Below, piece by piece: positions 25,356-40,100 of a stretch of DNA of 64,000 bases. The translations under genes were made by a program, and so were the position numbers. Location of the stretch: the IMG/VR virus record IMGVR_UViG_3300005337_000441, positions 1 through 64,000 of that record. One strand, given 5' to 3'. Each line of letters begins with the position of its first letter. Position 1 is the stretch's first letter. Below the pieces are notes generated by a model. That model had not been told where the DNA came from and searched no databases. It saw nothing but the letters and a program-made list of their open reading frames with translations.

Positions 25356-27497
25356 CTGGATCGTGCCAGCGGAAACTTCAGGTTGTCTCACGAAGGCTTC
25401 GAGCACGTGACCCGCGCCCAACGTGACGTATTGCAGCACACCTGCGGTGGCCGAGTCATGCACCATCGACGCCCAGAAAGCGGGCGAGGTGAGTTTGCCT
25501 GCGTTGGCAATGGCCTTGGCAATGCGCAGCTTTGCTTTGGGCATGGCATACAGCTGTGTGTACAGGTCTTGACCTGCAAGCACTGCCAGGTAGTCCGCCA
25601 GGATGTTGTCTTCGTCCAGACCCGCGTCACCACCGAAGAGCTCGCCCGTGGAGATGGGCATGTGCACAATGGAGGACAGATCCACCACCGTGAACTGCAC
25701 ATCGATCGCCATGGCGTTGCCCTTGACGTCAAACGCCAGGTGACTGACACCACGGTTCACGGACAAAGACTCGACCATGCCGAGCTTGATCTGCTGACGA
25801 CCCTTGTCGAAGACCTGACACAGGAAAGGCGGTCCGTAAGACTGCTTGCCTGTGGAGCGCGGCAAAGCCGCTGCAAGGATCATCGCCAGCGGGATGTAGA
25901 TGTTCATCATCTGCGAAATCACGTTCCCGTACGGGCTCATGAGATGCATCTTGTACGTAGAGCGTGAAAGACTCGACGACGAACTTTGCCAGTGTTTGGG
26001 GATGTCGAGGTAGCCTGAGCCACCCAGACCTGCCAAGAGGTTGCTAAAGCCCATGGTGACGCCATCCAGCGCGCCCAGGGCCACGTCCTTCACGGCACCC
26101 GCCACGGCGCCCACCGTCGCACCGGCCACGCCACCGATGATGTTGCCATCAGCGAAAGCGAAACGCGCCTGACGCATCTCGGAGGATTGGCTGTTGAGCT
26201 TCTGGGAGATCTGCGATTCCATCACCGCGTTGGTGAACGAATCGTTTTGAGCTCCGGTGTGTTCCACCTTGAAGACTGCGAACTGTGAACCGTCACGGAA
26301 CTCTGCGTCGAAGAAGTTCCAGAACGACGTGAACGTCGTGGGATCCTTCTTGGCCTTGGGGTCCGGGTTGTTCGGATCCACGCGGGGATCTTGTTCCATG
26401 CGAGGATTGTTGTCCTTGGACTCGTAGTACTCACCGAACGTGAGCACCCGGTTGATATAGGACATGAACGTCGCAGGCTTGCTCGGATTCAGGTACGTGG
26501 TGTGCGTGCCGCTGCCGGTCAACTGCTTCTGCAGGTAACCGGTGTAGTCGGTTGCCGAGCCTTGGTTCAGGCGGTCGTAGTCTTCGAGAAACGCTTGGTT
26601 GGCCAGACGCTGTGCGCGATTGGCCAGGGCGTAGATGTCGAAGTAGTTCGCTGCCGATTTCTTGTCCAGGATGGAAGGCGGGAACACGTCCGGCATCATC
26701 TTGGAGAGCTCGTTGTAGTACTCTTGGTCCAGCGTGTACGGCTGACCCAGGCGCTGCCCCTTCGTGGCGTCGTCCGCCATGATCTTGGGGAAGATGCCCT
26801 TGTTGATCGCGATGTTGTTCACGAGCTGGTTGACTGCGCCCCAGTACGTGTGCATCGTGGGCTTGAGCGTGTAGAACTTGCTCGTCGGGCGCGAGAAGAT
26901 CCAGTTGAGCAACTGTGCGCCTGCCACGAGTGCAGCCACCGCAGGGAAGGCCACCACCACCGTGATGGTGCCCGCGAGCTTGCCCAAGTTGTAGAACGCA
27001 CTCGTTGCGCGACCTGTGCGCACCAGCGCCGTGTCGTCAGCGGAGAACGCTTTGGACAGGAATGTGGAGAGAGAGTTGAACTGCTCCACACCGAAGCGCA
27101 TGTAGATGGTCTGTGCCGGATCATCGATGGCTTCGCTGTAGTAGCGACCCATGCCGAAGTTGCCCGACGTCGCGGTGGGCGACACGTCGTTGCGACCCGA
27201 GACACGACCCTTGGCACGGATGTCGCTGTAGCGGGTGAACTGCGGTTTGGGGTTGATACCGATATTGCAACCGAGCCTGGCGTCGGTGAACTTCGCATCT
27301 GCCGAAGACCAGTAGCGGTTGGCGACGTCGTTCGGATCGTCCAGACTGTTGTCAGAAATCAGGAACGCATTCTTGGCCCAGCTGTTGTCCAGGTGAAAGG
27401 CCAAGGGATCGGTCTTGAGTTGGTCCTCGAACGCAGTGATCGGGACACCCTCTTGACTCGTGATGATGGGCCTGATGCCACCAGCGGTGGATGTCAT
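25353..27497 (-). CDS. Tail/baseplate hub protein (phiKZ gp182-like, 714 aa)
   Basis: NP.PQFTRYSD, GMGRYYSEAIDD, YMRFGV..FNSL..F, ALPRSTG..SYG.PF motifs; directly downstream of gp181-like gene. Confidence 0.7.
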   Translation of the reverse strand: MTSTAGGIRPIITSQEGVPITAFEDQLKTDPLAFHLDNSWAKNAFLISDNSLDDPNDVANRYWSSADAKFTDARLGCNIGINPKPQFTRYSDIRAKGRVSGRNDVSPTATSGNFGMGRYYSEAIDDPAQTIYMRFGVEQFNSLSTFLSKAFSADDTALVRTGRATSAFYNLGKLAGTITVVVAFPAVAALVAGAQLLNWIFSRPTSKFYTLKPTMHTYWGAVNQLVNNIAINKGIFPKIMADDATKGQRLGQPYTLDQEYYNELSKMMPDVFPPSILDKKSAANYFDIYALANRAQRLANQAFLEDYDRLNQGSATDYTGYLQKQLTGSGTHTTYLNPSKPATFMSYINRVLTFGEYYESKDNNPRMEQDPRVDPNNPDPKAKKDPTTFTSFWNFFDAEFRDGSQFAVFKVEHTGAQNDSFTNAVMESQISQKLNSQSSEMRQARFAFADGNIIGGVAGATVGAVAGAVKDVALGALDGVTMGFSNLLAGLGGSGYLDIPKHWQSSSSSLSRSTYKMHLMSPYGNVISQMMNIYIPLAMILAAALPRSTGKQSYGPPFLCQVFDKGRQQIKLGMVESLSVNRGVSHLAFDVKGNAMAIDVQFTVVDLSSIVHMPISTGELFGGDAGLDEDNILADYLAVLAGQDLYTQLYAMPKAKLRIAKAIANAGKLTSPAFWASMVHDSATAGVLQYVTLGAGHVLEAFVRQPEVSAGTIQ

Positions 27498-27580: not shown

Positions 27581-30500
27581 TTACGCAGATTTTCTTGTCA
27601 GATCCACTGCGGCTTCGATCCTCTGAAACGATGCCGGTTGTTGCACAGGCTTGACAGCGTTGGGCTGTTGAGCTTGGGCGGGTTGTGCCGCGGCCTTCGT
27701 GACGGCTTGCGTCATGGCTTCGCTGTTCTGCAGCATCTTCTGCAAGACCGAGAGGGTCTGCACATGGATGTCCAGAGACTTGGTCAGGATGTCGTTGGTG
27801 GTGGCCGTGGTCTGTGACGAAGAACCCATCGCTTGCGGACGGCTGACAGTGTCCGGCTGCACGGCAGTTGTCGGAACAACCGGTGCAACACGACCCTGTG
27901 CCATTGGCATGGGCTGACGCACGATCGGAGCAGGCTCCGTCGAAGCGCGTGGCGTCACGGGAGGCTGGCCGCCCGTAGCGTCTCTCACAATGACTGGCGG
28001 CTCATCGCTCATCCGCCTTGCAGCGGGTTTGCTTTGAAGGTCACCACCACCTTGGTAGTTGATGCCGAACTCTTGCGCCTTCTTGGACAGACGTTGGTCG
28101 ATCTTGCGATAGACCTCACCGACCGTCAGAGGACGAGTGCCCTCGTAGAAGTAGCTCCTGTTGGCCGCTGCCGCGTTGGGCAGCACATTGGCTGCGATCT
28201 CGTTGGGATCAGCAGACAAGAACTTGCGTGCCCCGGTCGGACCGAGGAAGTGCGCCAAGTACACGTCCGTCATGTTCGGGTTGGGTTTGACCGAACTGAT
28301 GAAACGCTTGTTGGTTTTGTAGTAGTCCGACGCTGCGATGGTCGAGTCTTCCACGTCAGTGCGACGCGGGTTCGGGCCCATGCGAGGACCTGCGACTTGA
28401 ACCTGCTGATTCCAGCTGGCGTTCGTGAAGCCGAAGAGGCCTTCCGAAGTACCAACCGTAGAGCGAGCGTTGGGGTTCAGGCTCGACTCGACAGCAGCGT
28501 ACGTGAGGAGATCGTTCGGAGGCACGCCTTCTTGACGCGCCACCTTGGTCACCTTGTCCTTCACGTCGCCGTAAGGTCCCGACTGTTTGTCGTCGCCAGC
28601 GGTTGCCACGTCCTTGGGACGCGCTTCCATGTCCGGCATCTTAGCCGCAGCGTTGTACTTGTCGCTTTGTTGGTAGCTTGCCTGCACGCTGCTCGCCTGC
28701 TTGACACCCACGGAGGGTGCGTTTGCAGCCGTTTGCATCGGAGGCTTGATGGCCGCAACGGCAGCCACCGGCTTCGGAGCGGTCACGGGTTCGTTGGCGC
28801 CAGAGACATTCGGACCTTGCGCGAGCTCGGCCACCTTGTCCTTGTCTGACTTGCCATCGTCCTTCACGGTTTGACCCGTGAGTCCCATTTGAGCCACAGC
28901 GAACATCGTGTCGCGCTTGCCCAGCGGCGTGCCGCGAATGGAACCCACGCCACCGCCACCCTTGTTGATCGATGCACCCACCGCCTGAGAGGCAAAGTTG
29001 GGATCGTTCTTCGCGAGTTTGAGGTTACCCTGGATACCAGCAGCTTCCGTGTGCCACGGCTCGCCACCCACCGGGCGGGTGAAGCCGTACTTGCGCATCA
29101 GTCCAAGATCATCCATCGCGTCCAAGTCACCGCTGTTCATGTCGACCGCGAGGCCGTACTCGTGCAGCGAAGTGCCAGGCCTTGCAGCCTTCTTGGGATT
29201 TTGACGGAAGAGCTTTTCTTGTTCAGCGGTGTCACGTACTGCGGCATTCATCGTCACCGACTTGCCCGTGCGTTCACCGTACTCCTGGATCATGGCCAGG
29301 AGTTGTTGCTTCATGGCCGGGTTCATGCCGTCAAGCTTGACCCCGTCACCCATCTTCAGGTACTGCATGGCTTGAGAGCCGTCGCGCACGGGGCCATCGG
29401 CCACCTTAAGCGGACCCCCGAGCTTGCTAGGACCTTCATTGATGGTCTTGTCCACCGGACCCTTCTCACCTGTGGCAGGTTTCTCACGCAGCGGACCATC
29501 TTCGGCCGACTGTGATTCATCCCTGGGAGCAGCCTTGTTGCGGTCCTCGTTGGACTTGACAACTTGAGCCACGACCTTCTTGCCTTCATCGGCTTTCGGG
29601 TCCACAGCAGGTTTCTTGGTCGGATCGATCGCAGCAGTGACAGCGGTGACGCCAGCGACAGCCTTGGCAGCTTTGTCCGCCTTGTCCTTGTCCGCCTTTG
29701 CCTTCTTCTCTGCTTTGTCTTTGTCCGAAGCGGCTTGCTTGTCAGCGGCTTCCTTGGCCGTTGCCGTGCAGACCTTGATCAGCTCTTGAACCTGCGGTCT
29801 GGTGTAAGCCAGTTGCGGCAGATCCTTGAACGGAGAGACCGTCACGTTGTACGGACCGCTCTCGTAGCCGATCAAGCCATAGAACTTGACCTTCTCCGCG
29901 GCCGTCAATTCATCGTGAGCATTCTTCAGGCTCACCTTCTTGTTCACAGCGTAGAGCGCCGTGCAGTTGGTGAGGAAGAACGGTTTGAAGCGAGCGTCGA
30001 ACCATTGGCCCAGTTTAGAGGCCGATTCACCGTCTGCTTTGTCGATAGAGAAGATGTTCAGGAGTTCTTCCGGATCGATCTTCTTGTCCATCAAGACAGC
30101 TTTGTCACCCACGAACCCGACACGGCCGTCCAGGAGGTATTCCTCCAGTGCGAGCATGAGGTGGTTGTGCGATTTGTCACCGACCGTCAGACCGTATTGG
30201 TACATCCGGATCTGTTCGGTATCGTTGACGTTGTCTCGCGTGGAGTATTTGTAGAGCTTGTAAGCACCGTAGCCGACAGCAGCCACTGCTGCGGCGCCAA
30301 GTACCACAGGAGAAGCCAGGACTGCACCGATCGCTGAGATACCGGCACCGACAGCGCCGAGGATCGCAGAACCGACACCACCCGTCATGAGGCTGCCGAC
30401 GAGAGCGACGTTGCGAATCATGCCGACCTTGGAGACCAAGTTGGCCACCATGCCCACACGACCAGCACCTGCAACAGCGCCAGCGATCGGGCGTCCGATG

Positions 30501-33500
30501 GCGCCCAGCGCAGAGCCGACGGCTCCTGCTGCACGACCACCCAGTCCCAACAGACCCTTGGCTCCGTTGAAGACCTTGCCGACCAGACCACCAGCCATGC
30601 TGGCCACCGACCCTACACCGCTGATAACGCTACCCGCAGCGCCAAACAGCCTGCCCGCACCACTGGTGAGGAAACTGAAGACGCCAGACACCTTGTCCAT
30701 GATGGACTTGAAGATATCCTTTTCGGACACGTATTTGGCTTCGGCCGCTTGAAGACCCGGCGCATTGGCGCGACGTTGTGCGTCGGCTTCTGCTTGAGCT
30801 TCCAAGCGGTCTTCCCACGAACCATCCCGACGACCACTGCCGTCACGATCGTTGTAAGCAGGGTTGTCGACCTTGCGGCGACGACGCGTGGTCGTGGTCT
30901 TCTTCGGTGCGGCCTTTTGTGCCAGAGCCTTGTCGGTTTTCTTGCGACCCCGCTTTTTGGTTTCCGGCTCAGCTTCTTCAGCCTTGCCACCAAAGAACGA
31001 CATCGCGCCACCGAGCAACTTGCCCTTCAGACCACCCGCATTGGCCTTGATGGAACCCAGGACCTTGGAACCACGCTCCTTGAGTCCCTTCGTTCCGCCC
31101 AGCGATGCAAGTTTGTCTTTGCCTTGTTGGACCAGTTTATCAAAGCCCGTTTTCGGAGGCTCCACCGGAGCAGCCTTGGCCTTGCGGCGACGGCGCTTAC
31201 CCTTGACGGGCTCAGGTGCGACTTCTTCTTCCTTGGCAAAGCGATTCATGATGCGGTCCTTGAGGGACTTGGCACCACCGAGAATCCCGCTGAACGTATC
31301 GCCAAGCGTCTTGTCAGAGGTGTACTTGGCTTCCGGAGTTTCAAGTTCCGTGCCTTCAGAGCCACCTTCTGTGGTCGTGGTGATTTCTTCGTCGCCACCG
31401 CCTGCTGCACGCTGCGCAGCGAGCTTGCGGCCAACCAAAGTTTTCTTGCCGTAAGGGTTCTTCCTCTTTTCGAGGGTTTCCAGGAGCTTGTCTTTGAGAG
31501 ACTTGCTCTGGTCCTTTTCAGCAGCGCGTTGCGCCGCCAACTTACGACCCACCAGTGTTTTCTTGCCAGAGGGGTTGCGCTTCTTGTCCAGAAGCTCCAT
31601 GGCCTTGTCCTTGAGGGACATGCCTTTGGCGGTGATTTTGTCTTTGAGCTCGCCAGCTTTGCTCTTGAGATCAGTGAACGTGGCGCCACTGGCTCCAGAC
31701 TTCTTGTACTTCTCTTCGTGACGAGGTGGATTTTCACCACGCATCAGGTCACGCATCTCCACGAGCACATCGTAGATGCGCTTGTTGCCGAGGAGACCGA
31801 AGTTCTGGAAGAAGTCCTTGATGCCAGGCAGCCATTTGTCCATGAGCTTGCCACCGAACTCTTGACCCTTTTGCAGCAACATGTCCCAGGTCGAGCGCAG
31901 TGCCTTGATGGTCTTGCCACCGAGGTCCTTCGCCTTTTCTGCGATGCGTTCCAAGCCGGTCTTGACTCGGTTGCCGTACTGGTCGTACACGCCTTCAACA
32001 AGATCTTGAGCGTCAAGGATGACTTCACCTGCCTTGTTGACGATGGCGCCCTTGGCTTTCACCAAGTCGTCCATGGTCTTCAGCACCTGACCCGAGGCTG
32101 AGTCGTAGTACTCGCCCTCACGCAGCAACGAAGCCTTGATCACCGGAGACTTGCGTCCCTTGATGTAGACGTCGCGCACAGCGTACAGCGAGTTCTTCAC
32201 GGTGGCTTTCGCATCCGTGAGGAGATCCTTGGCCTTTTGGATATGGATCGGCAGTTTGTTGTCGATGTAGTCCTTACCGTAGGCGTAGCCTTGCTGAGCC
32301 AGCTCCCCGCCCTTGTCACGCGCTTGGCGCAGCTTGTCAAGGAAGGGATCACGGTAACGGTCATAGAGTTCTTGGGCTTTGTCCATGCCCGGCTTGACGA
32401 TGCGGTCACGACCGTATTCATAGCCGCGAATGGCACCTGCCTTGGCATCTTGAGCACCGCGTTTGACGAGTTCACCAGAGGCCGTCCAGATGTTACCCAG
32501 GATGTCCTGATAGGTGTCCTCACCCTTGTACTTGGAGCCAGTGCGACGTGCACCAGCTCTACCACCGGCCCCACCACCAAAACCACCCTTGCCCGATTCA
32601 ACGAGCTTACGGATGGCCTTGACGTCAGTGGCAATGGCCTTGACAGGGTTGGCAGCTTCTTCCTTCTTCGTGAAGAGCTTCTTGACCTTGTCGACAATAT
32701 CGTCTTGCTGGTCAGCGAGCTCCTGGATGGCAGCCATGTTGTTGCCATTCATCGAGGTCAGGTCGATCTTTTTGCCGCCCGGGGCTGCACCATCACCCAT
32801 GTTCTTGCGAACGTCTTGGGCCATGGGACCACGGTGCTGTTCATCGTCACCTTCGCCTGGCTTGTAGAACCAGTCAAAGATGCCCGTCTTGCGGATGGCG
32901 TTGAGTGCGCGCTTCGGATGCAGCGGGTGGATGTCTTCCTTGGTCTCCTCATCGGACTTGATGAGTTGCTTCGGCAGACGCTTGCCCGTGGCATTGCGGC
33001 GCTTCGGACGAGCCTTCTTGATGGCCGTCTTCTTGTTGCGATCCGAAGTCACAAGACCTTCGTCACGCACGAGCTTCAGGTAAGCTTCCTCATTGATGAT
33101 GAAGTCACCCTTGGCATCGCGGTCAACGAGACCTTGCTCTTCGAGGAGCTCACCGTAGCCGGCGTGGATGAGTTGTTCGATGACACCGCGAGCATCTGGC
33201 GTAGCGCTACGCACATTCATGATGCTCTTGGTCAGACCCAGCTGCCCGCGCAGCGGATCCTCAGCGTTTGTCACCTTGTGGTCAAGCAGCGTGTCCACGA
33301 GTTTCTTCGTGTCCGGATCGAGCATCTTGTACGCGTTAGTCGTCTTGATGTTCTCCGGCGTGAACGCCATGTTGGGGATCGACGACACCTTGGCGATGAA
33401 ATCGGTGATCTTCGCCTTGGTGCCCTCGTCTGTCTTCTTGTCGCCGATGAAGTCCTCTGCCGCATCACGGGCAAAGAAACCATAGCTCGACGTCTTGATC

Positions 33501-35059
33501 TTGTCGGACAGCGACTTCTTCACCATCTCGCCGATTGCTTTGCGATTGACGAACTTGCCGCTGCTCTGATCGTAGTAAACCATCTCGGCTTGCTCATCAC
33601 CCGTCCGCAACACGGTGATTTCACGCAAGATGCGTGCGAGGTAGCCAGGGATGATGTCCGTGATGCTGCGCTGCGTCTTGTCATTGAAGACGCCCACATT
33701 GGACGGAGATGTGATGCCGTAGGGGCTATTGACCCGGTTATCCGGTTGAGAGTCGGTGAAGTAGTTGGCGAATCGATCGATCCCTCGGGCCAACGAGCCC
33801 TTGGGTCCTTCTGCCTTCAAGTACTCTTGCGCCTTGTCGGATTTGCGAAGCTCTCCGATGGCACCGGGTAGGTTAGTGACGGCGTTGGCCCCTTTGGTGA
33901 GGGCGTTACGCAGCGCGGGCACTTTGTCCAAGCGCGGTCGTGCGAAACGACCAACCTTGTCACCCACCTTGTCACCAAGGAAACCTCCGAACGCATTGCC
34001 AGCCAGCTGGGCTCCGGAGAGCTGCTCGCCGCCAATTTCCTTGAGGATGTCGTTCGTTTCCTTGAGCTGCTGGTAACTGTCCACCCCCATGGTAACAGCT
34101 TCCAGACCTTGCTTCACCCCTTTGACATAGTCTTTGATGTCTGCAGTGATGCGCTTCAACCCGCGATCGATCGCGGAGCCTTCACCGAAGAACGAGTTTT
34201 GAATCCTGTCCATGAACTTGGTTCGCGCCAAGTCCTTGAAACGTTCAGAAGCCTTGATCTTCACGAACTCCGGCAACGCGGTGTTCTTGGCGATCGCTTC
34301 GTTTTGTGCTTTGAAGACCTCAAAGTACTGCTTCGACGTCGAAGCAATGTCCGTGAGAGCAAAGTAGCTACGGTATTGTAGCTCCAATGATTTCTTCTGT
34401 ACAGCTTGGGTGATGCGCTCCTGGTAGGAGGACATGCGTCCCACGTTGTTGCTGATCGTGGTCAGGATACCGAGACTTTGATCGAACTCCTTACGGCGGA
34501 TGTTCTCAACAATCTCGTCCTTGGCATTTCGACGTGCCTCAACCTCGGTCTGCGTGGCTTGTTGCTGCTGGAAGATGGAACCCAGGTTCGTTGCGATGCC
34601 TTGGTCTTGCAGCTGTTCTTTGGAGAGAGAAGACGGGCTCGACTCATCCCCGAAGAGGGAAGCGATTCGAGAGGAGATCTTCTTGAGCGTTTTGCGCTCT
34701 TCAGGCACCAGGCGGTCGACCTTCTTGGCCAACCGCGACGCCTGTGGTTTTAGCTCTTTTACCGCGTCATCGTATAGCGATGAGGCTGTGCCTGCGGCTT
34801 TATCGGCCGCATCCACGATGGTCCCGAACTCCTCCGGGAGAGCACTACGGGTCAATCTTGCTAAAAACGATGGGCTCTTGAACTTATCGACCGCTCCTGA
34901 GATGGTGCCCTTGAAGACCTCCGTCGTCGGAGATCGTGACGAGCGTTTCTTCGCATCAGGAGTGAGTTGACTGTCGATTTTCTCGTAGTCAAACTGGTCG
35001 AAATTCAGTTCATCGTCAAGCGAGAAGTCCTCGGTTCGAACTTTCTCATTCTTTGCCAT
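27581..35059 (-). CDS. Tape-measure / tail-associated peptidoglycan hydrolase (phiKZ gp181-like, 2492 aa) with internal S74, M15 peptidase and SLT domains
   Basis: Long Lys/Ala/Gly-rich helical body; RDGSW motif; M15 motifs SLHEYGLAVD and EPWH; SLT motif AAVESSLNPNA...DVYLAHFLGP.GA; divergent from vRNAP beta-prime gene. Confidence 0.85.
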   Translation of the reverse strand: MAKNEKVRTEDFSLDDELNFDQFDYEKIDSQLTPDAKKRSSRSPTTEVFKGTISGAVDKFKSPSFLARLTRSALPEEFGTIVDAADKAAGTASSLYDDAVKELKPQASRLAKKVDRLVPEERKTLKKISSRIASLFGDESSPSSLSKEQLQDQGIATNLGSIFQQQQATQTEVEARRNAKDEIVENIRRKEFDQSLGILTTISNNVGRMSSYQERITQAVQKKSLELQYRSYFALTDIASTSKQYFEVFKAQNEAIAKNTALPEFVKIKASERFKDLARTKFMDRIQNSFFGEGSAIDRGLKRITADIKDYVKGVKQGLEAVTMGVDSYQQLKETNDILKEIGGEQLSGAQLAGNAFGGFLGDKVGDKVGRFARPRLDKVPALRNALTKGANAVTNLPGAIGELRKSDKAQEYLKAEGPKGSLARGIDRFANYFTDSQPDNRVNSPYGITSPSNVGVFNDKTQRSITDIIPGYLARILREITVLRTGDEQAEMVYYDQSSGKFVNRKAIGEMVKKSLSDKIKTSSYGFFARDAAEDFIGDKKTDEGTKAKITDFIAKVSSIPNMAFTPENIKTTNAYKMLDPDTKKLVDTLLDHKVTNAEDPLRGQLGLTKSIMNVRSATPDARGVIEQLIHAGYGELLEEQGLVDRDAKGDFIINEEAYLKLVRDEGLVTSDRNKKTAIKKARPKRRNATGKRLPKQLIKSDEETKEDIHPLHPKRALNAIRKTGIFDWFYKPGEGDDEQHRGPMAQDVRKNMGDGAAPGGKKIDLTSMNGNNMAAIQELADQQDDIVDKVKKLFTKKEEAANPVKAIATDVKAIRKLVESGKGGFGGGAGGRAGARRTGSKYKGEDTYQDILGNIWTASGELVKRGAQDAKAGAIRGYEYGRDRIVKPGMDKAQELYDRYRDPFLDKLRQARDKGGELAQQGYAYGKDYIDNKLPIHIQKAKDLLTDAKATVKNSLYAVRDVYIKGRKSPVIKASLLREGEYYDSASGQVLKTMDDLVKAKGAIVNKAGEVILDAQDLVEGVYDQYGNRVKTGLERIAEKAKDLGGKTIKALRSTWDMLLQKGQEFGGKLMDKWLPGIKDFFQNFGLLGNKRIYDVLVEMRDLMRGENPPRHEEKYKKSGASGATFTDLKSKAGELKDKITAKGMSLKDKAMELLDKKRNPSGKKTLVGRKLAAQRAAEKDQSKSLKDKLLETLEKRKNPYGKKTLVGRKLAAQRAAGGGDEEITTTTEGGSEGTELETPEAKYTSDKTLGDTFSGILGGAKSLKDRIMNRFAKEEEVAPEPVKGKRRRRKAKAAPVEPPKTGFDKLVQQGKDKLASLGGTKGLKERGSKVLGSIKANAGGLKGKLLGGAMSFFGGKAEEAEPETKKRGRKKTDKALAQKAAPKKTTTTRRRRKVDNPAYNDRDGSGRRDGSWEDRLEAQAEADAQRRANAPGLQAAEAKYVSEKDIFKSIMDKVSGVFSFLTSGAGRLFGAAGSVISGVGSVASMAGGLVGKVFNGAKGLLGLGGRAAGAVGSALGAIGRPIAGAVAGAGRVGMVANLVSKVGMIRNVALVGSLMTGGVGSAILGAVGAGISAIGAVLASPVVLGAAAVAAVGYGAYKLYKYSTRDNVNDTEQIRMYQYGLTVGDKSHNHLMLALEEYLLDGRVGFVGDKAVLMDKKIDPEELLNIFSIDKADGESASKLGQWFDARFKPFFLTNCTALYAVNKKVSLKNAHDELTAAEKVKFYGLIGYESGPYNVTVSPFKDLPQLAYTRPQVQELIKVCTATAKEAADKQAASDKDKAEKKAKADKDKADKAAKAVAGVTAVTAAIDPTKKPAVDPKADEGKKVVAQVVKSNEDRNKAAPRDESQSAEDGPLREKPATGEKGPVDKTINEGPSKLGGPLKVADGPVRDGSQAMQYLKMGDGVKLDGMNPAMKQQLLAMIQEYGERTGKSVTMNAAVRDTAEQEKLFRQNPKKAARPGTSLHEYGLAVDMNSGDLDAMDDLGLMRKYGFTRPVGGEPWHTEAAGIQGNLKLAKNDPNFASQAVGASINKGGGGVGSIRGTPLGKRDTMFAVAQMGLTGQTVKDDGKSDKDKVAELAQGPNVSGANEPVTAPKPVAAVAAIKPPMQTAANAPSVGVKQASSVQASYQQSDKYNAAAKMPDMEARPKDVATAGDDKQSGPYGDVKDKVTKVARQEGVPPNDLLTYAAVESSLNPNARSTVGTSEGLFGFTNASWNQQVQVAGPRMGPNPRRTDVEDSTIAASDYYKTNKRFISSVKPNPNMTDVYLAHFLGPTGARKFLSADPNEIAANVLPNAAAANRSYFYEGTRPLTVGEVYRKIDQRLSKKAQEFGINYQGGGDLQSKPAARRMSDEPPVIVRDATGGQPPVTPRASTEPAPIVRQPMPMAQGRVAPVVPTTAVQPDTVSRPQAMGSSSQTTATTNDILTKSLDIHVQTLSVLQKMLQNSEAMTQAVTKAAAQPAQAQQPNAVKPVQQPASFQRIEAAVDLTRKSA

Positions 35060-35076
35060 GTGTGGGAAACCTCCGG

Positions 35077-35080
35077 CATA
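35077..35080 (-). promoter_or_regulatory. Candidate late promoter TATG upstream of gp181-like gene
   Basis: Minus strand TATGCCGGAGGTTTCCCACACATG: TATG, then GGAGG RBS, then start; matches the phiKZ late consensus TATG (only 4 bp, weak on its own). Confidence 0.4.
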
Positions 35081-35112
35081 GACGAATTAACAAATCTCAC
35101 AGGATCAGGCTT

Positions 35113-36735
35113 ATGTCTTTAATTAGCCAAACGCCGTTCAATATCGCACTGCTCATCCCGAGCGATGCAGATGTTGCCGGTATGCGCCCCGTGAAAGTGC
35201 TGGACATCAACGATGGTCTGAGCAAAAACTTTCACCCCGATGGTCTGTTCTCGGTGGAAACGTTCGGCAAAGTGGGTGAGGAAAGGCGCAACCGTCTCTT
35301 CTCCTACATCGACATGCACATCAGCGTCTTCCACCCCGTGGTGTATAAGGCGCTGTTGGACTTGAAGAGCCTGTACGGTGACATCATCGCAGGCACGGGT
35401 TATGCGGTGTTCGACCCCGAAACCAACGATTTCGAAAAGTCCGACGTCACTCAAGGGGACACGGGCTTTGCCTTCTTCGTGAAGCACTTCGAGAAGATCC
35501 AGTTCGAGTCGCGCCCCAGCGCCAAGCGGGAGTTCAACATCGCGCTGGTGAACAAGTACCGCAAGAACTGCCTGATGGACAAACTCGTCGTCATGCCGGC
35601 AGGCCTGCGTGACTACACGGTCGACGAAAACTCCAAGCCGAGTGAAGACGAGATCAATGGCCTGTACCGTCGCGTGCTCAATGTGGCTTCGGTCATCGAG
35701 AACGTCAACGCCAAGAGCAACGTCGAGTACCTGGACTCCACCCGCTACGGCCTGCAACAGCGCGTCAACGAGATCTACGAGTACATCGTGAATCTGCTTG
35801 AAGGCAAGAGCAAGCTCATTCAGGGCAAGTGGGCCTCGCGCAAGATCTTCGACTCCACTCGAAACGTGATTTCCCCGCACGTCTCCAAGACGGACGAGTT
35901 CTTCACGGGTCGCACGGTGTCTTCGAATCAGACCATCGTCGGCTTGTACCAGTACCTGCGCTGCATCATGCCGCTGGCGGTCAAGCACGTGCGCGACACG
36001 TACCTCTCCAAAGTGTTCCTGGGTCCGAACTCACCCGCCGTGCTGGTGAACAAGAAGACCTACAAGAAGGAACTGGTCAACCTCGATCCGCGTTACTACG
36101 ACGAGTGGATGACGTACGAGGGTCTGGAAAAGCTCATGGCCCGGTTCGGTCAGGAAGAGCTCCGTGACGACGTCCTGGAGATCGAGAACTACTACGTGGG
36201 TCTGCTGTACAGGCAAGGTGGTCATGTGCGCTTCGTGCAGGACATCTCCGACGTCCCCATCAACGGCTCGCACGATCCTCGCGAACTCCTCACGCCCATC
36301 ACGTTCTGTGAACTGCTGTACCTGTCGGTGTTTGCTGACGCGGCGAGCATCCCTTGCCTGCTGACACGTTATCCGGTCACGGGGTATGGCTCGATCTATC
36401 CGAGCTACGTCTACCTCAAGACCACGGTGCGTGCTGAACAGGTCAAGGTCCTGGGCGACGACTGGGAAACCGTGATCGGCACAGCCTACGAGTTCCCCAT
36501 CAAAGGCGAACAGTACTTCAACGCGATGAGTCCTTCGACCACTCACGTGGCTCGTCTGGGCGCAGACTACGACGGCGACACTTGCTCGCTGATCTGCCTG
36601 CTCACCGAAGACGCCAAGGTGGAAGTCAAGAAGAAGCTCAACAGCCGCGACTACTATGTGGGTGTCAATGGCAAGATGGCGTTCAGCGCCGGCAACGACA
36701 TCATCGATCTGGTGTTGGCCAACGTCACGAGCTGA
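35113..36735 (+). CDS. rpoC: Virion RNA polymerase beta-prime subunit, catalytic part (phiKZ gp180-like), uninterrupted
   Basis: FHPDGLFSVETFG, IQGKWASRKIF..TRNVI, TRYPV, LGADYDGD catalytic Asp triad. Confidence 0.9.
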   Translation: MSLISQTPFNIALLIPSDADVAGMRPVKVLDINDGLSKNFHPDGLFSVETFGKVGEERRNRLFSYIDMHISVFHPVVYKALLDLKSLYGDIIAGTGYAVFDPETNDFEKSDVTQGDTGFAFFVKHFEKIQFESRPSAKREFNIALVNKYRKNCLMDKLVVMPAGLRDYTVDENSKPSEDEINGLYRRVLNVASVIENVNAKSNVEYLDSTRYGLQQRVNEIYEYIVNLLEGKSKLIQGKWASRKIFDSTRNVISPHVSKTDEFFTGRTVSSNQTIVGLYQYLRCIMPLAVKHVRDTYLSKVFLGPNSPAVLVNKKTYKKELVNLDPRYYDEWMTYEGLEKLMARFGQEELRDDVLEIENYYVGLLYRQGGHVRFVQDISDVPINGSHDPRELLTPITFCELLYLSVFADAASIPCLLTRYPVTGYGSIYPSYVYLKTTVRAEQVKVLGDDWETVIGTAYEFPIKGEQYFNAMSPSTTHVARLGADYDGDTCSLICLLTEDAKVEVKKKLNSRDYYVGVNGKMAFSAGNDIIDLVLANVTS

Positions 36736-37154: not shown

Positions 37155-40100
37155 ATGCAAATGCATTTCAACGTCTTTTACCACCAGTACGGTATCAGAC
37201 GAATCGATCACCTGCTGACCCCGAAGCTGCTCACGCTTCAGAGTCTGCCCCGAGATGCGATGGTCCACTACCTCAGTGACGACCCGCAAGCTCCTGACCT
37301 GGATGTCTCCCAGCCCTGGCTGGCGACGTCCAACAAGAACGTGGCTGTGGACTATGCGACACAGCTCACTGACCTGCTGGGCAATCCTCACCCTCACATG
37401 GGGAAGACCGTGCGTGACCTCACGCGCGACTTCCATCAAAGCCACCGCAAGTTCAAGTTCACGCCGGACGGGGTGAACAAGATCGGTGACCAGACGGTGC
37501 TGCAAGTCATGAACTACAGCTACCTGGATGCGATGTACACCTACGCACCGGTGCCCCTCACGCCCTGGTACAAGTTCTGGAACAACAACCGCCTGCTGTT
37601 CGGCACCATTGCCAAGATCGGTCAGAGCAAGTCGAAGAACCACTTCGTCTTTCTGAAGGTGCCTCAACAACTGCCGTCCTACCAGCTGCTCAACCTGTAC
37701 GCTGACAAGGAAGTGGCGCGCGTCACACTGCAGGTCTTCAACTCCTACGCGGATCTCATGATCTTGCAGCTGTGGAAATGGCTGGAAGGCGAGGATCGCG
37801 AGGTGACGGTCTTCGGTGCGCTCACGCAAAGCGACCTGGCCAAGGTGAACATCGTCTTCGTCGTGCCGGACGGCCGCTCGATCGTGATGAACCTGGGCTA
37901 CATGGACAGTTGGATCAAGGGTCATGCCAAGCTCGACGCTCAGAAGAGCCAACAGCAGCAAGACCCCCAGGCGCTCAAGAAGCTTTTCTTGAAGTTCCTG
38001 ATCACGGTGACCGCTGCCATCCCGGAAGCCGAAGTCGCTGAGATCCAAGGCGCCCAAACACCGGAAGACAAGCAAGACCAGACCGAGCTTCAAGCGGAGT
38101 CCGACGAGTACCTGCGTGAACATGACGATGACGCCGAAGACAGCATCGACGATCACGAGTTCGAGGACGCCGCGGATCTGATGTCTGGTCTTGGCAAAAA
38201 CACCAAGACGCTTAAAAAGCGTCCGAATGAAGACGTTGCTCAGCGCCTGCAAGCTCTGGACAAGGACATCGACTCCTCGATGTCTTCCGCAACACTGGAC
38301 CTGGGCGAGAAGCTCAAGACGATCGATCAAGACCTGAAGGTGCTCGACCTGCTCAACAGCCGTCGCCTGAAGGATCGTGGCATCCGTCTGGACAAGGAAG
38401 GCGAGCAAGTGCCGCCGGCCGCTCCGGTGGAAGACATTCCGCTGGAAGTACTGCAGCAGCAGATCTACCAGCCTGTCGACTACGAAGAAGCGCTGCTCAA
38501 GCAGATCAATGAATCGGCGGACTTCGGTCTGCTCTCGGCTGCGGACTTCCGCAGGGCTACAGCTGACGTTCAGAAGTACAAGACGTCGCAAGACCCTTAC
38601 GGGTCAGGCCAGCTCACCGTGCAAGCCATGGTGGTCACGCCTGAGGCGATCAAGCTCAATCCGCAAAAGACCGAGATCACGGTGTCGGACAAGGTCGTGG
38701 ACAAGACGATGGCTCAGTCCTCGCTCATGGCCTTCGATCACGACTATATCAAGAACGTCTACAAGAAAGACATGCTGGGCATGATCAATAACCTGCAAAA
38801 AGCAGGCGTGATCGTGCGCAACCATGAAATCGAACTGGACCACAGCGCGCTGGGCACCTACGAGAACCACACGCTCGAACTCAAGCCGATCGATGGCCAG
38901 CCTTCCAAGCTGAGGTTCCGTCTGCCGCAGGTGCAAACCGATGGCACGTTCGTGGCCAATGGCAACAAGTACGTGATGCGCAAGCAGCGCGTGGATGTAC
39001 CCATTCGCAAGACCAACGCCTACACGGTGGCTTTGACGAGCTACTACGGCAAGACCTTCGTCACGGTCAACCAAAAGCAGGCGAACAATTCGCTGGCTTG
39101 GATCGTGAAGGAACTCAACAAAGCGTCGTTCTCGGACAACCACCCTTACATCACGCGCGTGGCGCCTGCCCAGGTCTTCGACAACAACTTCGAAGCCCCG
39201 TGGATCTACAACGCCCTGGCCAACCACTTCAAGTCGGTGACCACGAAGGACTACACGTTGGTCTTTGACCATCAGGAACGTCTGGGTCTCTTTGAAGAAG
39301 CCAGCGAAGGCGGTGAGAAGCTCGGTCCCTACGATCCGGTGCATGCCGCCAAGATCGAAAACGCGGGTGGTAAGGCGTGGAAGTACCGACTCGTCGGCTA
39401 CAGCAACGCAGGCCTGGGCCACATCGTGGTCGACCGTGCCAACCAGTTCTGGCTGCTCGGTCGTGAAGGCGAGCCTCAGCCGCTGGGCGACATCTACCAA
39501 GTGTTGCAACTGGACGCTCACAAGGCTCCGGTGGACTTCACCGAAGTGCGCATCTTCTCCAAGACGGTGCCTGTCGGTGTGGTGCTCGGTTACACCATCG
39601 GTTTCAAGAACCTCTTGAAGCTGCTGGGTGCCAAGCATGAAGTCGTGGAAGGTCGCCGGCTGCCGGACCTCACACCACACCAGTACGTCATTTCCTTCAA
39701 GAACGAGAAGTACATTCTCGATCGCCGTCAACGCACCGCCTCCATGATCCTTTCGGGGTATCTGGACTACGAACGCCAACTGCGCTCGTACGACGCGGCG
39801 GAGTTCGACAAGAAGGACGTCTACCTGAACCTGCTGGCCTCCAAGGGCCTGGGGTCTTTGTACATCCGTGAGCTTGAACTCACCAACCAGCTCTTTGTCG
39901 ACCAGATCACTCTGTCGATCCTGCAGCAAATGAACGAGCCTTCGACGTTCCACGGTCTGCTGATCCGTGCAACGCAGATGCTGGAGACCTACCACCATCC
40001 GGACTCGCAGGACATGAAGTCCATGCGCATCCGCGGCTACGAACGTTTCCCTGGTGCGGTCTACAAAGAACTCACGGCGCAAATCCGTCAGTTCAAGAAC

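What the first reader, a model, noticed from the sequence alone, without database searches (positions are those of the whole stretch)
32700..33052. Self-cleaving Peptidase_S74 chaperone domain with two tandem catalytic motifs in the middle of the tape-measure/tail lysin
Seen: residues ~670-786 of the 2492-aa gp181-like protein read VT-SDRNKK-TAI...K-SDEETK-EDIHPLHPKRALNAIRKTGIFDWFYKPGEGDDEQHRGPMAQDVRKNMG...KIDLTSMNGNNMAAIQEL. Established: this is the S74/intramolecular-chaperone pattern (SDxxxK Ser-Lys dyad, aL..i, Y-K, HxGxxAQ, final AIQEL helix) of K1F endosialidase and MYRF, which trimerises and cuts just before the Ser. In phages it normally sits at the C-terminus of spikes/fibres. Here it is internal with ~1700 aa following it, and there are two correctly spaced dyads (S672/K677 and S702/K707). 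Inference: the tape measure may trimerise through this domain and cut itself, separating a ~670-700-aa N-terminal piece from the lysin-bearing piece. That would be an assembly- or ejection-coupled self-processing mechanism that does not need the prohead protease. I do not recall it from phiKZ gp181.
Basis: partly seen in the sequence, partly recalled or inferred. Interest (0 to 1): 0.8.

Follow-up and report, generated by a model that had tools for sequence, protein, structure and literature searches.

The report
Self-cutting domain inside giant tail protein
The 2492-residue tail tape-measure/lysin protein of this uncultured phiKZ-like jumbo phage carries, one third of the way along, a genuine self-cleaving trimerisation domain (Peptidase S74) that normally ends phage tail fibres, so the protein probably cuts itself in two during tail assembly; cleavage itself is not shown.

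Summary
The ORF at 27581-35059 (-) is a syntenic, collinear orthologue of phiKZ gp181. Residues 702-798 are a bona fide Peptidase_S74 (ICA) domain: Pfam 37.6 bits against a cut-off of 22, and a top fold match to the MyRF ICA domain. The Ser-Lys dyad, the aromatic pair W730/Y732 and a heptad C-terminal helix are all in place.

The domain is absent from nine cultured chimallivirus gp181 proteins, and no jumbo phage in the phage collection matched it. It is present at about residue 650-860 in more than 120 diverse giant homologues from metagenomes. All but one of these, a truncated sequence, keep at least one SDxxxK dyad.

The second, upstream dyad (S672/K677) is real. It lies outside the Pfam match, in a segment predicted to be disordered. 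It is not chance: 18 of 123 relatives have both dyads, 22 have only the upstream one and 2 have three, against 0.005 expected per window.

Best reading: like MYRF, the domain trimerises and cuts before S702 and/or S672. That would split a 74-78 kDa helical N-terminal piece from a roughly 191-195 kDa lysin-bearing piece. Cleavage, the site used and its timing are inferred, not shown. This is a new variant of a known kind.

The parts
27581..35059 (-). Whole gene: 2492-aa orthologue of phiKZ gp181 (putative tail tape-measure protein with wall hydrolases).
   Evidence: phrog_3201 matches with E 8e-196. Four blocks are collinear with phiKZ gp181 by BLASTP. The gene is syntenic with the vRNAP subunit genes and a gp182-like gene.
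33047..35059 (-). N-terminal module, aa 1-671, shared with all chimallivirus gp181 proteins. It is mostly long alpha-helices followed by a helical globular domain at aa 460-668.
   Evidence: tblastn homology to 215 phage records ends at aa 645-684. Foldseek found no PDB fold match for this module.
33029..33046 (-). Distal Ser-Lys motif S672-D-R-N-K-K677, directly after the N-module.
   Evidence: Translation. pLDDT is below 50. In the 56-sequence alignment this position carries the invariant S, D and K columns. Among 17 two-dyad relatives the motif is SD[KR]NxKxxI, with S, D, K and I at 17 of 17.
32957..33028 (-). Basic linker, aa 678-701, with net charge +10. Together with the distal motif it would be a 30-aa, 3.5-kDa peptide of pI 12 if both sites were cut.
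   Evidence: In relatives the linker is 10-48 aa long, hypervariable, and always net positive (+1 to +12). It is predicted disordered.
32939..32956 (-). Proximal Ser-Lys dyad S702-D-E-E-T-K707. It is the canonical catalytic dyad at profile position 1 of Peptidase_S74, and the predicted scissile bond is K701|S702.
   Evidence: It aligns with MyRF S587(A)/K592 and with the N-terminal SDERHK of the GA-1 neck-appendage chaperone. S702 to W730 is 28 residues, the same as MyRF S587 to Y615.
32666..32956 (-). Folded S74/ICA domain, aa 702-798.
   Evidence: Pfam. AF2 pLDDT is above 90. Foldseek matches 7dc3, 4uw8 and 3gw6 and S74 proteins in BFVD.
32864..32872 (-). Aromatic pair W730/Y732 on the first beta-strand, equivalent to MyRF Y615/Y617, which line the 'cutter hole'.
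   Evidence: Invariant in 38 of 38 and 56 of 56 homologues. The role of Y615/Y617 is described in PMC8326128.
32666..32761 (-). Long C-terminal helix of the domain, aa 767-798, with a/d heptad positions at I778, L781, Q785, I788, V792 and L795. It is the likely trimeric coiled coil.
   Evidence: AF2 helix 143-174 of the model. Hydrophobic spacing. In MyRF this coiled coil drives trimerisation (PMC8326128).
30245..30697 (-). Gly/Ala-rich hydrophobic region, aa 1455-1605, in the fragment downstream of the cut. It resembles the membrane-active segments of tape-measure proteins.
   Evidence: It is homologous to the Gly-rich segment in L005.
29117..29326 (-). VanY-like (M15) peptidase domain, aa 1912-1981.
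   Evidence: Pfam PF02557, 24.8 bits against a cut-off of 25. phrog_13118 and phrog_2649, annotated as endolysin.
28310..28546 (-). Lytic transglycosylase (SLT) domain, aa 2172-2250.
   Evidence: Pfam PF01464, 19.6 bits against a cut-off of 21.3. phrog_4067, transglycosylase, E 5e-30. It aligns with the lytic C-terminal region of phiKZ gp181.

Best explanation
Residues 702-798 are a catalytically competent Peptidase_S74 (intramolecular chaperone auto-processing) domain embedded in the gp181-type tail tape-measure/lysin protein.

Inferred mechanism, by analogy with MyRF and phage fibre chaperones:
1. Three chains are brought into register by the domain's C-terminal coiled-coil helix.
2. The N-terminal 'cable' of each chain, which carries the dyad, threads through the beta-strand 'donut' of a neighbouring chain, lined by W730/Y732.
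3. The Ser-Lys dyad cuts the bond just before the Ser.

The principal site is K701|S702. This would give a trimeric, mostly helical N-terminal fragment of about 78 kDa. It would also give a fragment of about 191 kDa that starts with the S74 domain and carries the Gly-rich hydrophobic region and both wall hydrolases.

The upstream motif S672/K677 comes from a partial duplication of the domain's first segment. It is probably an alternative or second cleavage site.

Shown here: the identity of the domain, intact catalytic and structural residues, the internal position, conservation, and the duplication history. Inferred: trimerisation, cleavage, the site used, and that both products stay in the tail.
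For: Domain identity:
- Pfam PF13884 is above its cut-off.
- A profile of 38 homologues hits MyRF ICA, the GA-1 neck-appendage chaperone and a tail-fibre chain, each aligned at SDxxxK.
- The AF2 model matches 7dc3, 4uw8 and 3gw6 and S74 fibre proteins in BFVD.

Catalytic and structural residues:
- S702/K707 align with MyRF S587/K592. W730/Y732 align with Y615/Y617. The Ser-to-aromatic spacing is 28 residues in both.
- The C-terminal helix has a clean heptad pattern.

Selection on the dyad:
- 122 of 123 giant representatives keep at least one SDxxxKxx[IVLF]. Their N-modules are as little as 25% identical to the window's. The single exception is N-truncated and reads TSVYVK.
- In the 56-sequence alignment, S, D and K are invariant.
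- A purely structural oligomerisation domain would not be expected to retain the dyad.

Precedent:
- An internal ICA domain that cleaves and releases an N-terminal trimer exists in MYRF. There, trimerisation of the ICA alone suffices and the upstream stalk is not needed (PMC8326128).
- Tape-measure proteins of lambda and T5 are cleaved in the virion by an unknown catalyst (PMC12617516).
Against: - No proteomic or biochemical data exist for this phage or any S74-bearing relative.
- The segment just upstream of the dyad is predicted as an alpha-helical domain plus a disordered linker, not the triple beta-helix that triggers cleavage in phage fibres.
- Only a monomer could be modelled.
- Cultured chimalliviruses assemble functional tails with gp181 proteins that lack the domain, so cleavage at this position is not essential to the family.
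- In canonical phage proteins the S74 part is discarded. Here it would have to stay attached to the indispensable lysin-bearing part.
Confidence: 0.62

Rival explanations
1. Trimerisation or chaperone role only. The S74 domain registers three chains of the helical N-module or of the tape measure, but no cleavage occurs in this context. The protein stays intact in the virion, as gp181 presumably does in phiKZ.
For: No beta-helical stalk is predicted upstream. In phage endosialidase an upstream residue (R897) contributes to autocleavage (cited in PMC8326128). S74-less orthologues function without any cut here.
Against: The Ser, Asp and Lys of at least one dyad are retained in 122 of 123 diverged homologues, and the aromatic pair is invariant. 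That is hard to explain without catalysis. MyRF cleaves without any stalk contribution.
Confidence: 0.17
2. The distal site is the operative one. Cleavage occurs before S672, the family-invariant position directly after the N-module. The proximal SDEETK is a relaxed duplicate that now serves mainly as the structural start of the fold. Alternatively both are cut, releasing a 30-aa basic peptide.
For: - 22 of 123 relatives keep only a distal dyad, 53-121 residues upstream of GPMA. They include a coherent clade of 12.
- The distal motif keeps the ancestral-type Asn at +3 in 16 of 17 two-dyad proteins, while the proximal one keeps it in 5 of 17.
- In the 56-sequence alignment the invariant S, D and K map to S672/D673/K677.
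- In MyRF the cable is cut by a neighbouring subunit, so a longer tether is geometrically conceivable.
Against: - In this protein the distal motif lacks the duplicated helix that follows it in distal-only relatives. It is predicted disordered.
- Only the proximal dyad has the canonical 28-residue spacing to W730.
- Proximal S, D, K and I are also 17 of 17 conserved.
- Alignment of a single motif to either copy is ambiguous.
Confidence: 0.18
3. Inert relic. The domain would be a leftover of an old fusion or insertion of a fibre-type gene end, with no present function.
For: The nearest non-giant relatives carry the domain at their C-terminus in proteins of about 380 aa, phrog_8003. The junction after the N-module is a variable cassette site, occupied by a GEAGPEAIMPL motif in RSL2 and a Pro/Arg linker in FLC9.
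Against: The core is 42-75% identical to the window's across the 37 closest relatives, with 15 invariant columns. That is much better conserved than the flanks. The domain is retained in more than 120 clusters at 50% identity.
Confidence: 0.03

Closest known systems
[quoted passage not shown]
   Same: This is the best fold match. The S74 domain is internal rather than terminal. The Ser-Lys dyad, the aromatic pair and the 28-residue spacing are the same. A C-terminal coiled-coil helix is present. A hydrophobic, membrane-type segment and further domains lie downstream. Cleavage would free an N-terminal trimer.
   Different: There is no NDT80-type DNA-binding domain, so the protein is not a transcription factor. 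No beta-helical stalk is predicted upstream. The downstream part is about 1700 aa of phage tail protein. There is an extra upstream dyad. Sequence identity is only about 18%.
C-terminal intramolecular chaperone domains of phage spikes and fibres (K1F endosialidase 3gw6, T5 pb1 4uw8, GA-1/phi29 neck appendage 3gud; phrog_8003 virion proteins)
   Same: Same Pfam family, dyad and fold. The closest sequence relatives outside the giant proteins are phrog_8003 proteins of phages of about 58 kb.
   Different: Those domains are the last roughly 100-150 residues, follow a beta-helix or receptor-binding domain, and are discarded after cleavage. Here the domain follows an alpha-helical module and stays fused to the functional C-terminal two thirds of the protein.
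phiKZ gp181 / SPN3US gp239 (chimallivirus tail tape-measure protein with a lytic domain)
   Same: Orthologous by HMM, four collinear blocks and synteny. It is the largest gene, sits next to the gp182-like gene, and has a C-terminal transglycosylase.
   Different: phiKZ, RSL2, Goslar, Vibrio Yong, SPLA10, FLC9, DT01, PCH45 and LucasX have no S74 domain at any threshold tried. The window protein also has a VanY-like peptidase.
Proteolytic processing of tape-measure proteins (lambda gpH to gpH* plus gpHC; T5 pb2)
   Same: A tail-lumen protein is cut after or during tail assembly into pieces that stay in the virion (PMC12617516).
   Different: In lambda and T5 the cut is near the C-terminus and its catalyst is unknown. 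Here a recognisable autoprotease sits at about 28% of the length. No homology was found.

Membership tests
Peptidase_S74 / CIMCD / ICA domain (PF13884, MEROPS S74) | Match to the family HMM above the curated threshold. | tested here: met
   37.6 bits on the whole protein and 45.1 bits on aa 640-820, against a cut-off of 22. The match covers aa 702-753, profile positions 1-52 of 58.
Peptidase_S74 / CIMCD / ICA domain (PF13884, MEROPS S74) | Ser-Lys catalytic dyad (Ser, with Lys at +5) at the first residues of the domain. | tested here: met
   S702/K707 align with MyRF S587(A)/K592 and with the GA-1 SDERHK. Ser, Asp and Lys are at least 90% conserved in 38 homologues and invariant in 56 when the distal copy is used.
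Peptidase_S74 / CIMCD / ICA domain (PF13884, MEROPS S74) | Fold: N-terminal cable and helix, a small beta 'donut', and a long C-terminal helix. | tested here: met
   AF2 pLDDT is above 90. Foldseek probability is 1.00 to 7dc3, followed by 4uw8 and 3gw6. There are 15 BFVD hits at E<=0.001; those that carry names are S74, fibre or chaperone proteins.
Peptidase_S74 / CIMCD / ICA domain (PF13884, MEROPS S74) | Aromatic residues lining the cleavage pocket (MyRF Y615/Y617). | tested here: met
   W730/Y732 are invariant in all aligned homologues. The equivalence comes from the alignment. Their role is described in PMC8326128.
Peptidase_S74 / CIMCD / ICA domain (PF13884, MEROPS S74) | Homotrimerisation through the C-terminal coiled coil. 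| not testable with these tools
   Only a monomer could be predicted. The helix at aa 767-798 has a/d heptad spacing, which is consistent with a coiled coil but is not a test.
Peptidase_S74 / CIMCD / ICA domain (PF13884, MEROPS S74) | Autoproteolysis immediately N-terminal to the Ser. | not testable with these tools
   This needs expression or proteomics. It is supported only indirectly, by retention of the dyad in 122 of 123 homologues.
Peptidase_S74 / CIMCD / ICA domain (PF13884, MEROPS S74) | Phage-type context: the domain is at the C-terminal end and preceded by a trimeric beta-helix or fibre. | tested here: not met
   1694 residues follow the domain. The upstream region is alpha-helical plus a disordered linker in the monomer models. 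This is a feature of the usual phage context, not of the Pfam family, and MYRF also departs from it.
phiKZ gp181-type tail tape-measure/lysin protein (phrog_3201) | HMM match and collinear homology with gp181. | tested here: met
   phrog_3201, E 8e-196. BLASTP blocks pair as 33-645 with 38-664, 942-1080 with 915-1064, 1612-1778 with 1364-1533, and 2173-2475 with 1888-2223.
phiKZ gp181-type tail tape-measure/lysin protein (phrog_3201) | Synteny: divergent from the virion RNA polymerase subunit genes and followed by a gp182-like gene. | tested here: met
   The ORFs at 35053-36732 and 37155-41612 are annotated as RNAP beta subunits in PHROGs. The ORF at 25356-27497 is phrog_3181. The same order is seen in phiKZ, RSL2, Goslar and others and in relative L012.
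phiKZ gp181-type tail tape-measure/lysin protein (phrog_3201) | Actual tape-measure function and location in the tail lumen. | not testable with these tools
   The literature calls gp181 'likely' the tape measure (10.1101/2025.11.23.690004) and calls SPN3US gp239 the 'tail tape measure protein' (PMC10052503). Long helices and a Gly-rich hydrophobic region are consistent with this.
MYRF-type membrane-bound transcription factors | An NDT80/PhoG-type DNA-binding domain N-terminal to the ICA domain. | tested here: not met
   No such Pfam hit at E<=1. The N-module is helical and has no PDB fold match. The protein works like MYRF at the level of the ICA module but is not a member.

The most novel reading that the evidence does not exclude
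A large, so far uncultured branch of phiKZ-like jumbo phages has a built-in S74 'cable-cutter' that processes the tail tape-measure protein. This would be the first identified catalyst for tape-measure cleavage. The duplicated dyads would make processing two-step, or would excise a short, strongly basic peptide of 10-48 residues. On the N-module tree, S74-less FLC9 lies among S74-bearing proteins and the other cultured proteins are their sister group, so cultured chimalliviruses may have lost the module at least once.
Probability: 0.3. Interest if true: 0.75.

Novelty: new variant of a known kind. Interest (0 to 1): 0.6.

Why it matters
Tape-measure proteins of lambda and T5 are known to be cut inside the tail, but how the cut is catalysed is unknown (PMC12617516). 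Here a recognisable autoprotease sits inside the putative tape measure of more than 120 diverged jumbo-phage lineages. That gives a directly testable self-processing mechanism that needs no separate protease.

It also extends the MYRF-type 'internal ICA' architecture back into phages, where the domain was thought to be terminal and disposable. In addition it provides natural variants with one, two or three dyads at different tether lengths. These variants can probe how the S74 cutter recognises its substrate strand.

No cultured phage in the collection searched carries the domain, so the feature has been invisible to experimental work on phiKZ-like phages.

Tried and rejected
1. A cryptic S74 domain in cultured gp181 proteins. 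I tried Pfam at E<=1 on three of them, hhalign of the S74 profile against phiKZ and RSL2, and hmmsearch --max at E<=100 on nine. Nothing was found. The 'HFIGPMYQ' string in phiKZ gp181 (aa ~722-729) is treated as chance.

2. Direct phmmer of aa 640-820 against PDB sequences gave only a spurious tRNA-transferase hit. A profile was needed.

3. Megablast of 2 kb of the gene against phages found no match. tblastn of the S74 region found only terminal S74 domains of small phages.

4. A fold search of the whole N-module model found nothing beyond the S74 part. The N-module fold remains unassigned, and its long helices are of low confidence.

5. A recent DNA-level duplication behind the two dyads: no repeat links the two motif regions. 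The duplication is old or reduced to the motif.

6. Natural gene splits at the S74 boundary as evidence for modularity. Two metagenome contigs split the gene, but 160-470 residues downstream of the domain, and at least one looks like a frameshift. These were not used as evidence.

7. Literature searches linking S74 to phiKZ-type gp181 or to tape-measure proteins found nothing relevant. Thomas et al. 2012 on phiKZ proteolysis was not held.

8. A trimer prediction was not possible with the tools.
Full report
**The gene**

The finding lies in the ORF at 27581..35059 on the minus strand, which encodes 2492 aa with no stop.

The protein is an orthologue of phiKZ gp181:
- It matches phrog_3201 over aa 2-919 with E 8e-196.
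- BLASTP against phiKZ gp181 gives four collinear blocks: 33-645, 942-1080, 1612-1778 and 2173-2475.
- It is divergently adjacent to two genes for virion RNA-polymerase beta-type subunits and is followed by a phrog_3181 gene. The same order is seen in phiKZ, RSL2, Goslar, SPLA10, FLC9, DT01, PCH45 and LucasX.

The literature calls phiKZ orf181 'likely' the tape measure and essential (10.1101/2025.11.23.690004). It calls SPN3US gp239 the 'tail tape measure protein' (PMC10052503).

The phage itself is far from anything cultured. Its vRNAP beta protein is at most 42% identical to any record in the phage collection.

**Checking the observation**

Pfam places Peptidase_S74 (PF13884) at aa 702-753, profile positions 1-52 of 58. 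The score is 37.6 bits against a curated cut-off of 22, and 45.1 bits on the excised aa 640-820.

A profile of the region from 38 homologues hits three PDB chains: the MyRF ICA domain (7dc3), the GA-1 neck-appendage chaperone (3gud) and a tail-fibre chain (8jov). Each is aligned at the SDxxxK start.

An AlphaFold2 model of aa 625-800 has pLDDT above 90 for aa 703-800. Its best PDB matches are 7dc3 (probability 1.00, E 6.6e-4), then the T5 pb1 chaperone 4uw8 and the K1F endosialidase chaperone 3gw6. Against viral predicted structures, the named top hits are S74, tail-fibre or 'intramolecular chaperone auto-processing' proteins.

The domain is real.

**Catalytic equipment**

From the alignment and the MyRF structure paper (PMC8326128):
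- S702 and K707 correspond to MyRF S587 and K592, which in turn correspond to endoNF S911 and K916.
- W730 and Y732 correspond to MyRF Y615 and Y617. These line the hole through which the neighbouring chain's 'cable' is threaded and cut.
- The Ser-to-aromatic spacing is 28 residues in both proteins.
- MyRF is cut between P586 and S587, so 'cuts just before the Ser' is correct.

The last helix (aa 767-798) has hydrophobic residues at 778, 781, 785, 788, 792 and 795, a clean heptad. This matches the triple coiled coil that drives ICA trimerisation in MyRF.

**How widespread it is**

No cultured chimallivirus has the domain:
- tblastn of aa 640-820 against 50,697 phage records hit only nine small phages, all with terminal S74 domains.
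- Pfam, hhalign and a filter-free hmmsearch found nothing in nine cultured gp181 proteins.
- Homology of those proteins to the window protein stops at aa 645-684, just before the domain.

In metagenomes the picture is the opposite. A word-indexed search found 37 giant proteins (1510-3480 aa, on contigs up to 270 kb) with the domain at the same place. A profile search of 1.84 billion representatives gave 1149 hits at E<=1e-10. Among the best 150, about 110 are proteins of 1300-3650 aa with the domain at about residue 650-860. Most of the rest are proteins of about 100-500 aa; where they appear full-length the domain is C-terminal, and the sampled ones are phrog_8003 virion proteins. One relative that was checked has the same gene neighbourhood.

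The domain core is much better conserved than its flanks. There are 15 invariant columns, including W730, Y732, G744-P-M-A747, D749 and G772.

**The two dyads**

The distal SDRNKK (aa 672-677) lies outside the Pfam match and in a segment with pLDDT below 50, together with the strongly basic 24-residue linker. It is nevertheless not a chance string.

Among 123 giant representatives:

| Dyad arrangement | Number |
|---|---|
| Canonical (proximal) dyad only | 80 |
| Both proximal and distal | 18 |
| Distal only | 22 |
| Three dyads | 2 |
| No SD dyad (N-truncated, reads TSVYVK) | 1 |

The motif's background rate predicts 0.005 per upstream window.

In distal-only proteins the dyad is followed by a duplicate of the domain's first helix (P..LL..V..RF). 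Then comes a linker of about 15-70 residues and a second helix without a dyad (WNP..AY.GIKKT) leading into the core. This is the signature of a partial tandem duplication of the domain's N-terminal segment, with lineages keeping one copy, the other, or both.

On an N-module tree, the distal-only state forms one coherent clade of 12. The window's own clade mixes both-dyad, proximal-only and distal-only states. Other two-dyad and three-dyad proteins lie elsewhere on the tree. The arrangement has therefore arisen or been resolved several times.

In 17 two-dyad proteins, S, D, K(+5) and I(+8) are 17 of 17 in both copies. The linker between them varies from 10 to 48 residues and is always net positive. 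The distal copy keeps the ancestral-type Asn at +3 in 16 of 17, and the proximal copy in 5 of 17. In a 56-sequence alignment the invariant S, D and K columns fall on S672/D673/K677.

There is no DNA-level repeat in the window, so the duplication is old.

My reading is as follows. In this protein the proximal dyad is the canonical cutter substrate. The distal one is under selection and is plausibly a second or alternative site. Which is used cannot be decided here.

**What would be separated**

The N-module (aa 1-671) is predicted as long helices, with low to moderate confidence, followed by a better-defined helical domain at aa 460-668. It has no PDB fold match.

Cleavage would give a fragment of 74.3 kDa (cut at 671/672) or 77.8 kDa (cut at 701/702). 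The remainder would be 194.7 or 191.2 kDa, and a 3.5-kDa peptide of pI 12 would be released if both sites were cut.

The C-terminal fragment would begin with the S74 domain. It would also carry:
- a basic, low-complexity stretch that includes a 2 x ~41-aa repeat;
- a 150-residue Gly/Ala-rich hydrophobic region;
- a block conserved with phiKZ;
- a VanY-like peptidase;
- an SLT transglycosylase.

**Mechanism and its rivals**

The best-supported model is MYRF-like: trimerise, thread, cut, and free an N-terminal trimer from a C-terminal part that contains a membrane-active segment. The main support is that the dyad is almost universally retained across homologues whose N-modules are as little as 25% identical to the window's. 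An inert oligomerisation domain would not need it.

Against this:
- No beta-helical stalk is predicted upstream.
- S74-less orthologues work without a cut at this position.
- No protein-level data exist.

In MyRF the stalk is dispensable for cleavage, which weakens the first objection. I put self-cleavage at about 0.6, trimerisation without cleavage at about 0.17, and predominant or additional use of the distal site at about 0.18.

**Gain or loss**

On a midpoint-rooted N-module tree, eight cultured S74-less proteins form a weakly supported group (0.57). That group sits inside a well-supported clade (0.99) together with 14 S74-bearing proteins. FLC9, also S74-less, is nested among S74-bearing ones. 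This suggests at least one loss.

Two caveats apply. The uncultured set was selected for having the domain, and the root is uncertain, so the direction of change is not settled. The junction after the N-module behaves as a variable cassette site. RSL2 has a GEAGPEAIMPL motif there and FLC9 has a Pro/Arg-rich linker.

**Comparison with what is known, and novelty**

S74 domains are well known at the ends of phage fibres and spikes, and internally in MYRF. A comparative review of jumbo phages mentions S74 only for 'group 2' jumbo phages (example AAQ64368.1) and in the context of tail-fibre and tail-spike assembly (PMC7824862).

Full-text searches found no paper that links S74 to gp181-type proteins or to tape-measure proteins. 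A 2025 study states that only the lambda and T5 tape measures are known to be cleaved and that the catalyst is unknown (PMC12617516).

This is therefore a new variant of a known kind: a known autoprotease module in a new and mechanistically suggestive host protein, with an unusual duplicated substrate strand.

**Verdict**

- Observation: confirmed.
- Interpretation: partly supported. Identity and architecture are shown; cleavage is inferred.
- Interest: 0.6.

Noticed in passing
window ~31394-31591 (-), aa ~1157-1222 of the same ORF: There is a tandem repeat of about 41 aa, 'KRNP.GKKTLVGRKLAAQRAA' twice, in the basic low-complexity stretch between the S74 domain and the Gly-rich region.
   Followed up: no
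L002 (Ralstonia phage RSL2 ORF039), aa ~680-695; L008 (FLC9), aa ~650-690: At the junction where this clade has S74, RSL2 carries a 'GIMGEAGPEAIMPL' motif and FLC9 a Pro/Arg-rich linker. From memory, the RSL2 motif resembles ones seen in tape-measure proteins; this was not tested here. The site after the gp181 N-module looks like a cassette position.
   Followed up: partly
L004:2422-6622 and L005:1413-6391: In two metagenome contigs the gp181-like gene is split into two ORFs, 160-470 residues downstream of the S74 domain. The second ORF is homologous to later parts of the window protein. In L004 the gap appears to be coding in another frame, so a frameshift or assembly error is likely.
   Followed up: partly
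P0097 and P0152 (giant homologues), aa ~680-780: Two representatives carry three tandem SDxNxKEE[IV] motifs upstream of one S74 core.
   Followed up: partly
P0150, aa 17-25: This is the only giant representative without an S-D dyad. It reads 'TSVYVKEAI' at the distal position, possibly with Thr as the nucleophile. The sequence is N-terminally truncated.
   Followed up: no
window 29117-29326 and 28310-28546 (-): The protein carries two different wall-hydrolase domains, VanY-like M15 and SLT. phiKZ gp181 has only SLT, and RSL2 and Goslar have GH19 instead, so the lytic end is swapped between lineages.
   Followed up: partly
window 35053-35059: The ATG of the 2492-aa ORF (35059, minus strand) overlaps by 7 bases the first possible TTG start of the divergent vRNAP-subunit ORF (35053, plus strand). 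The PHROG match of that ORF begins at residue 26, so its real start is probably further downstream, leaving a short divergent promoter region.
   Followed up: no
L003:2212-2640 (Goslar): The Goslar record annotates a group I intron between the vRNAP-subunit genes next to its gp181 homologue. Nothing comparable was looked for in the window.
   Followed up: no
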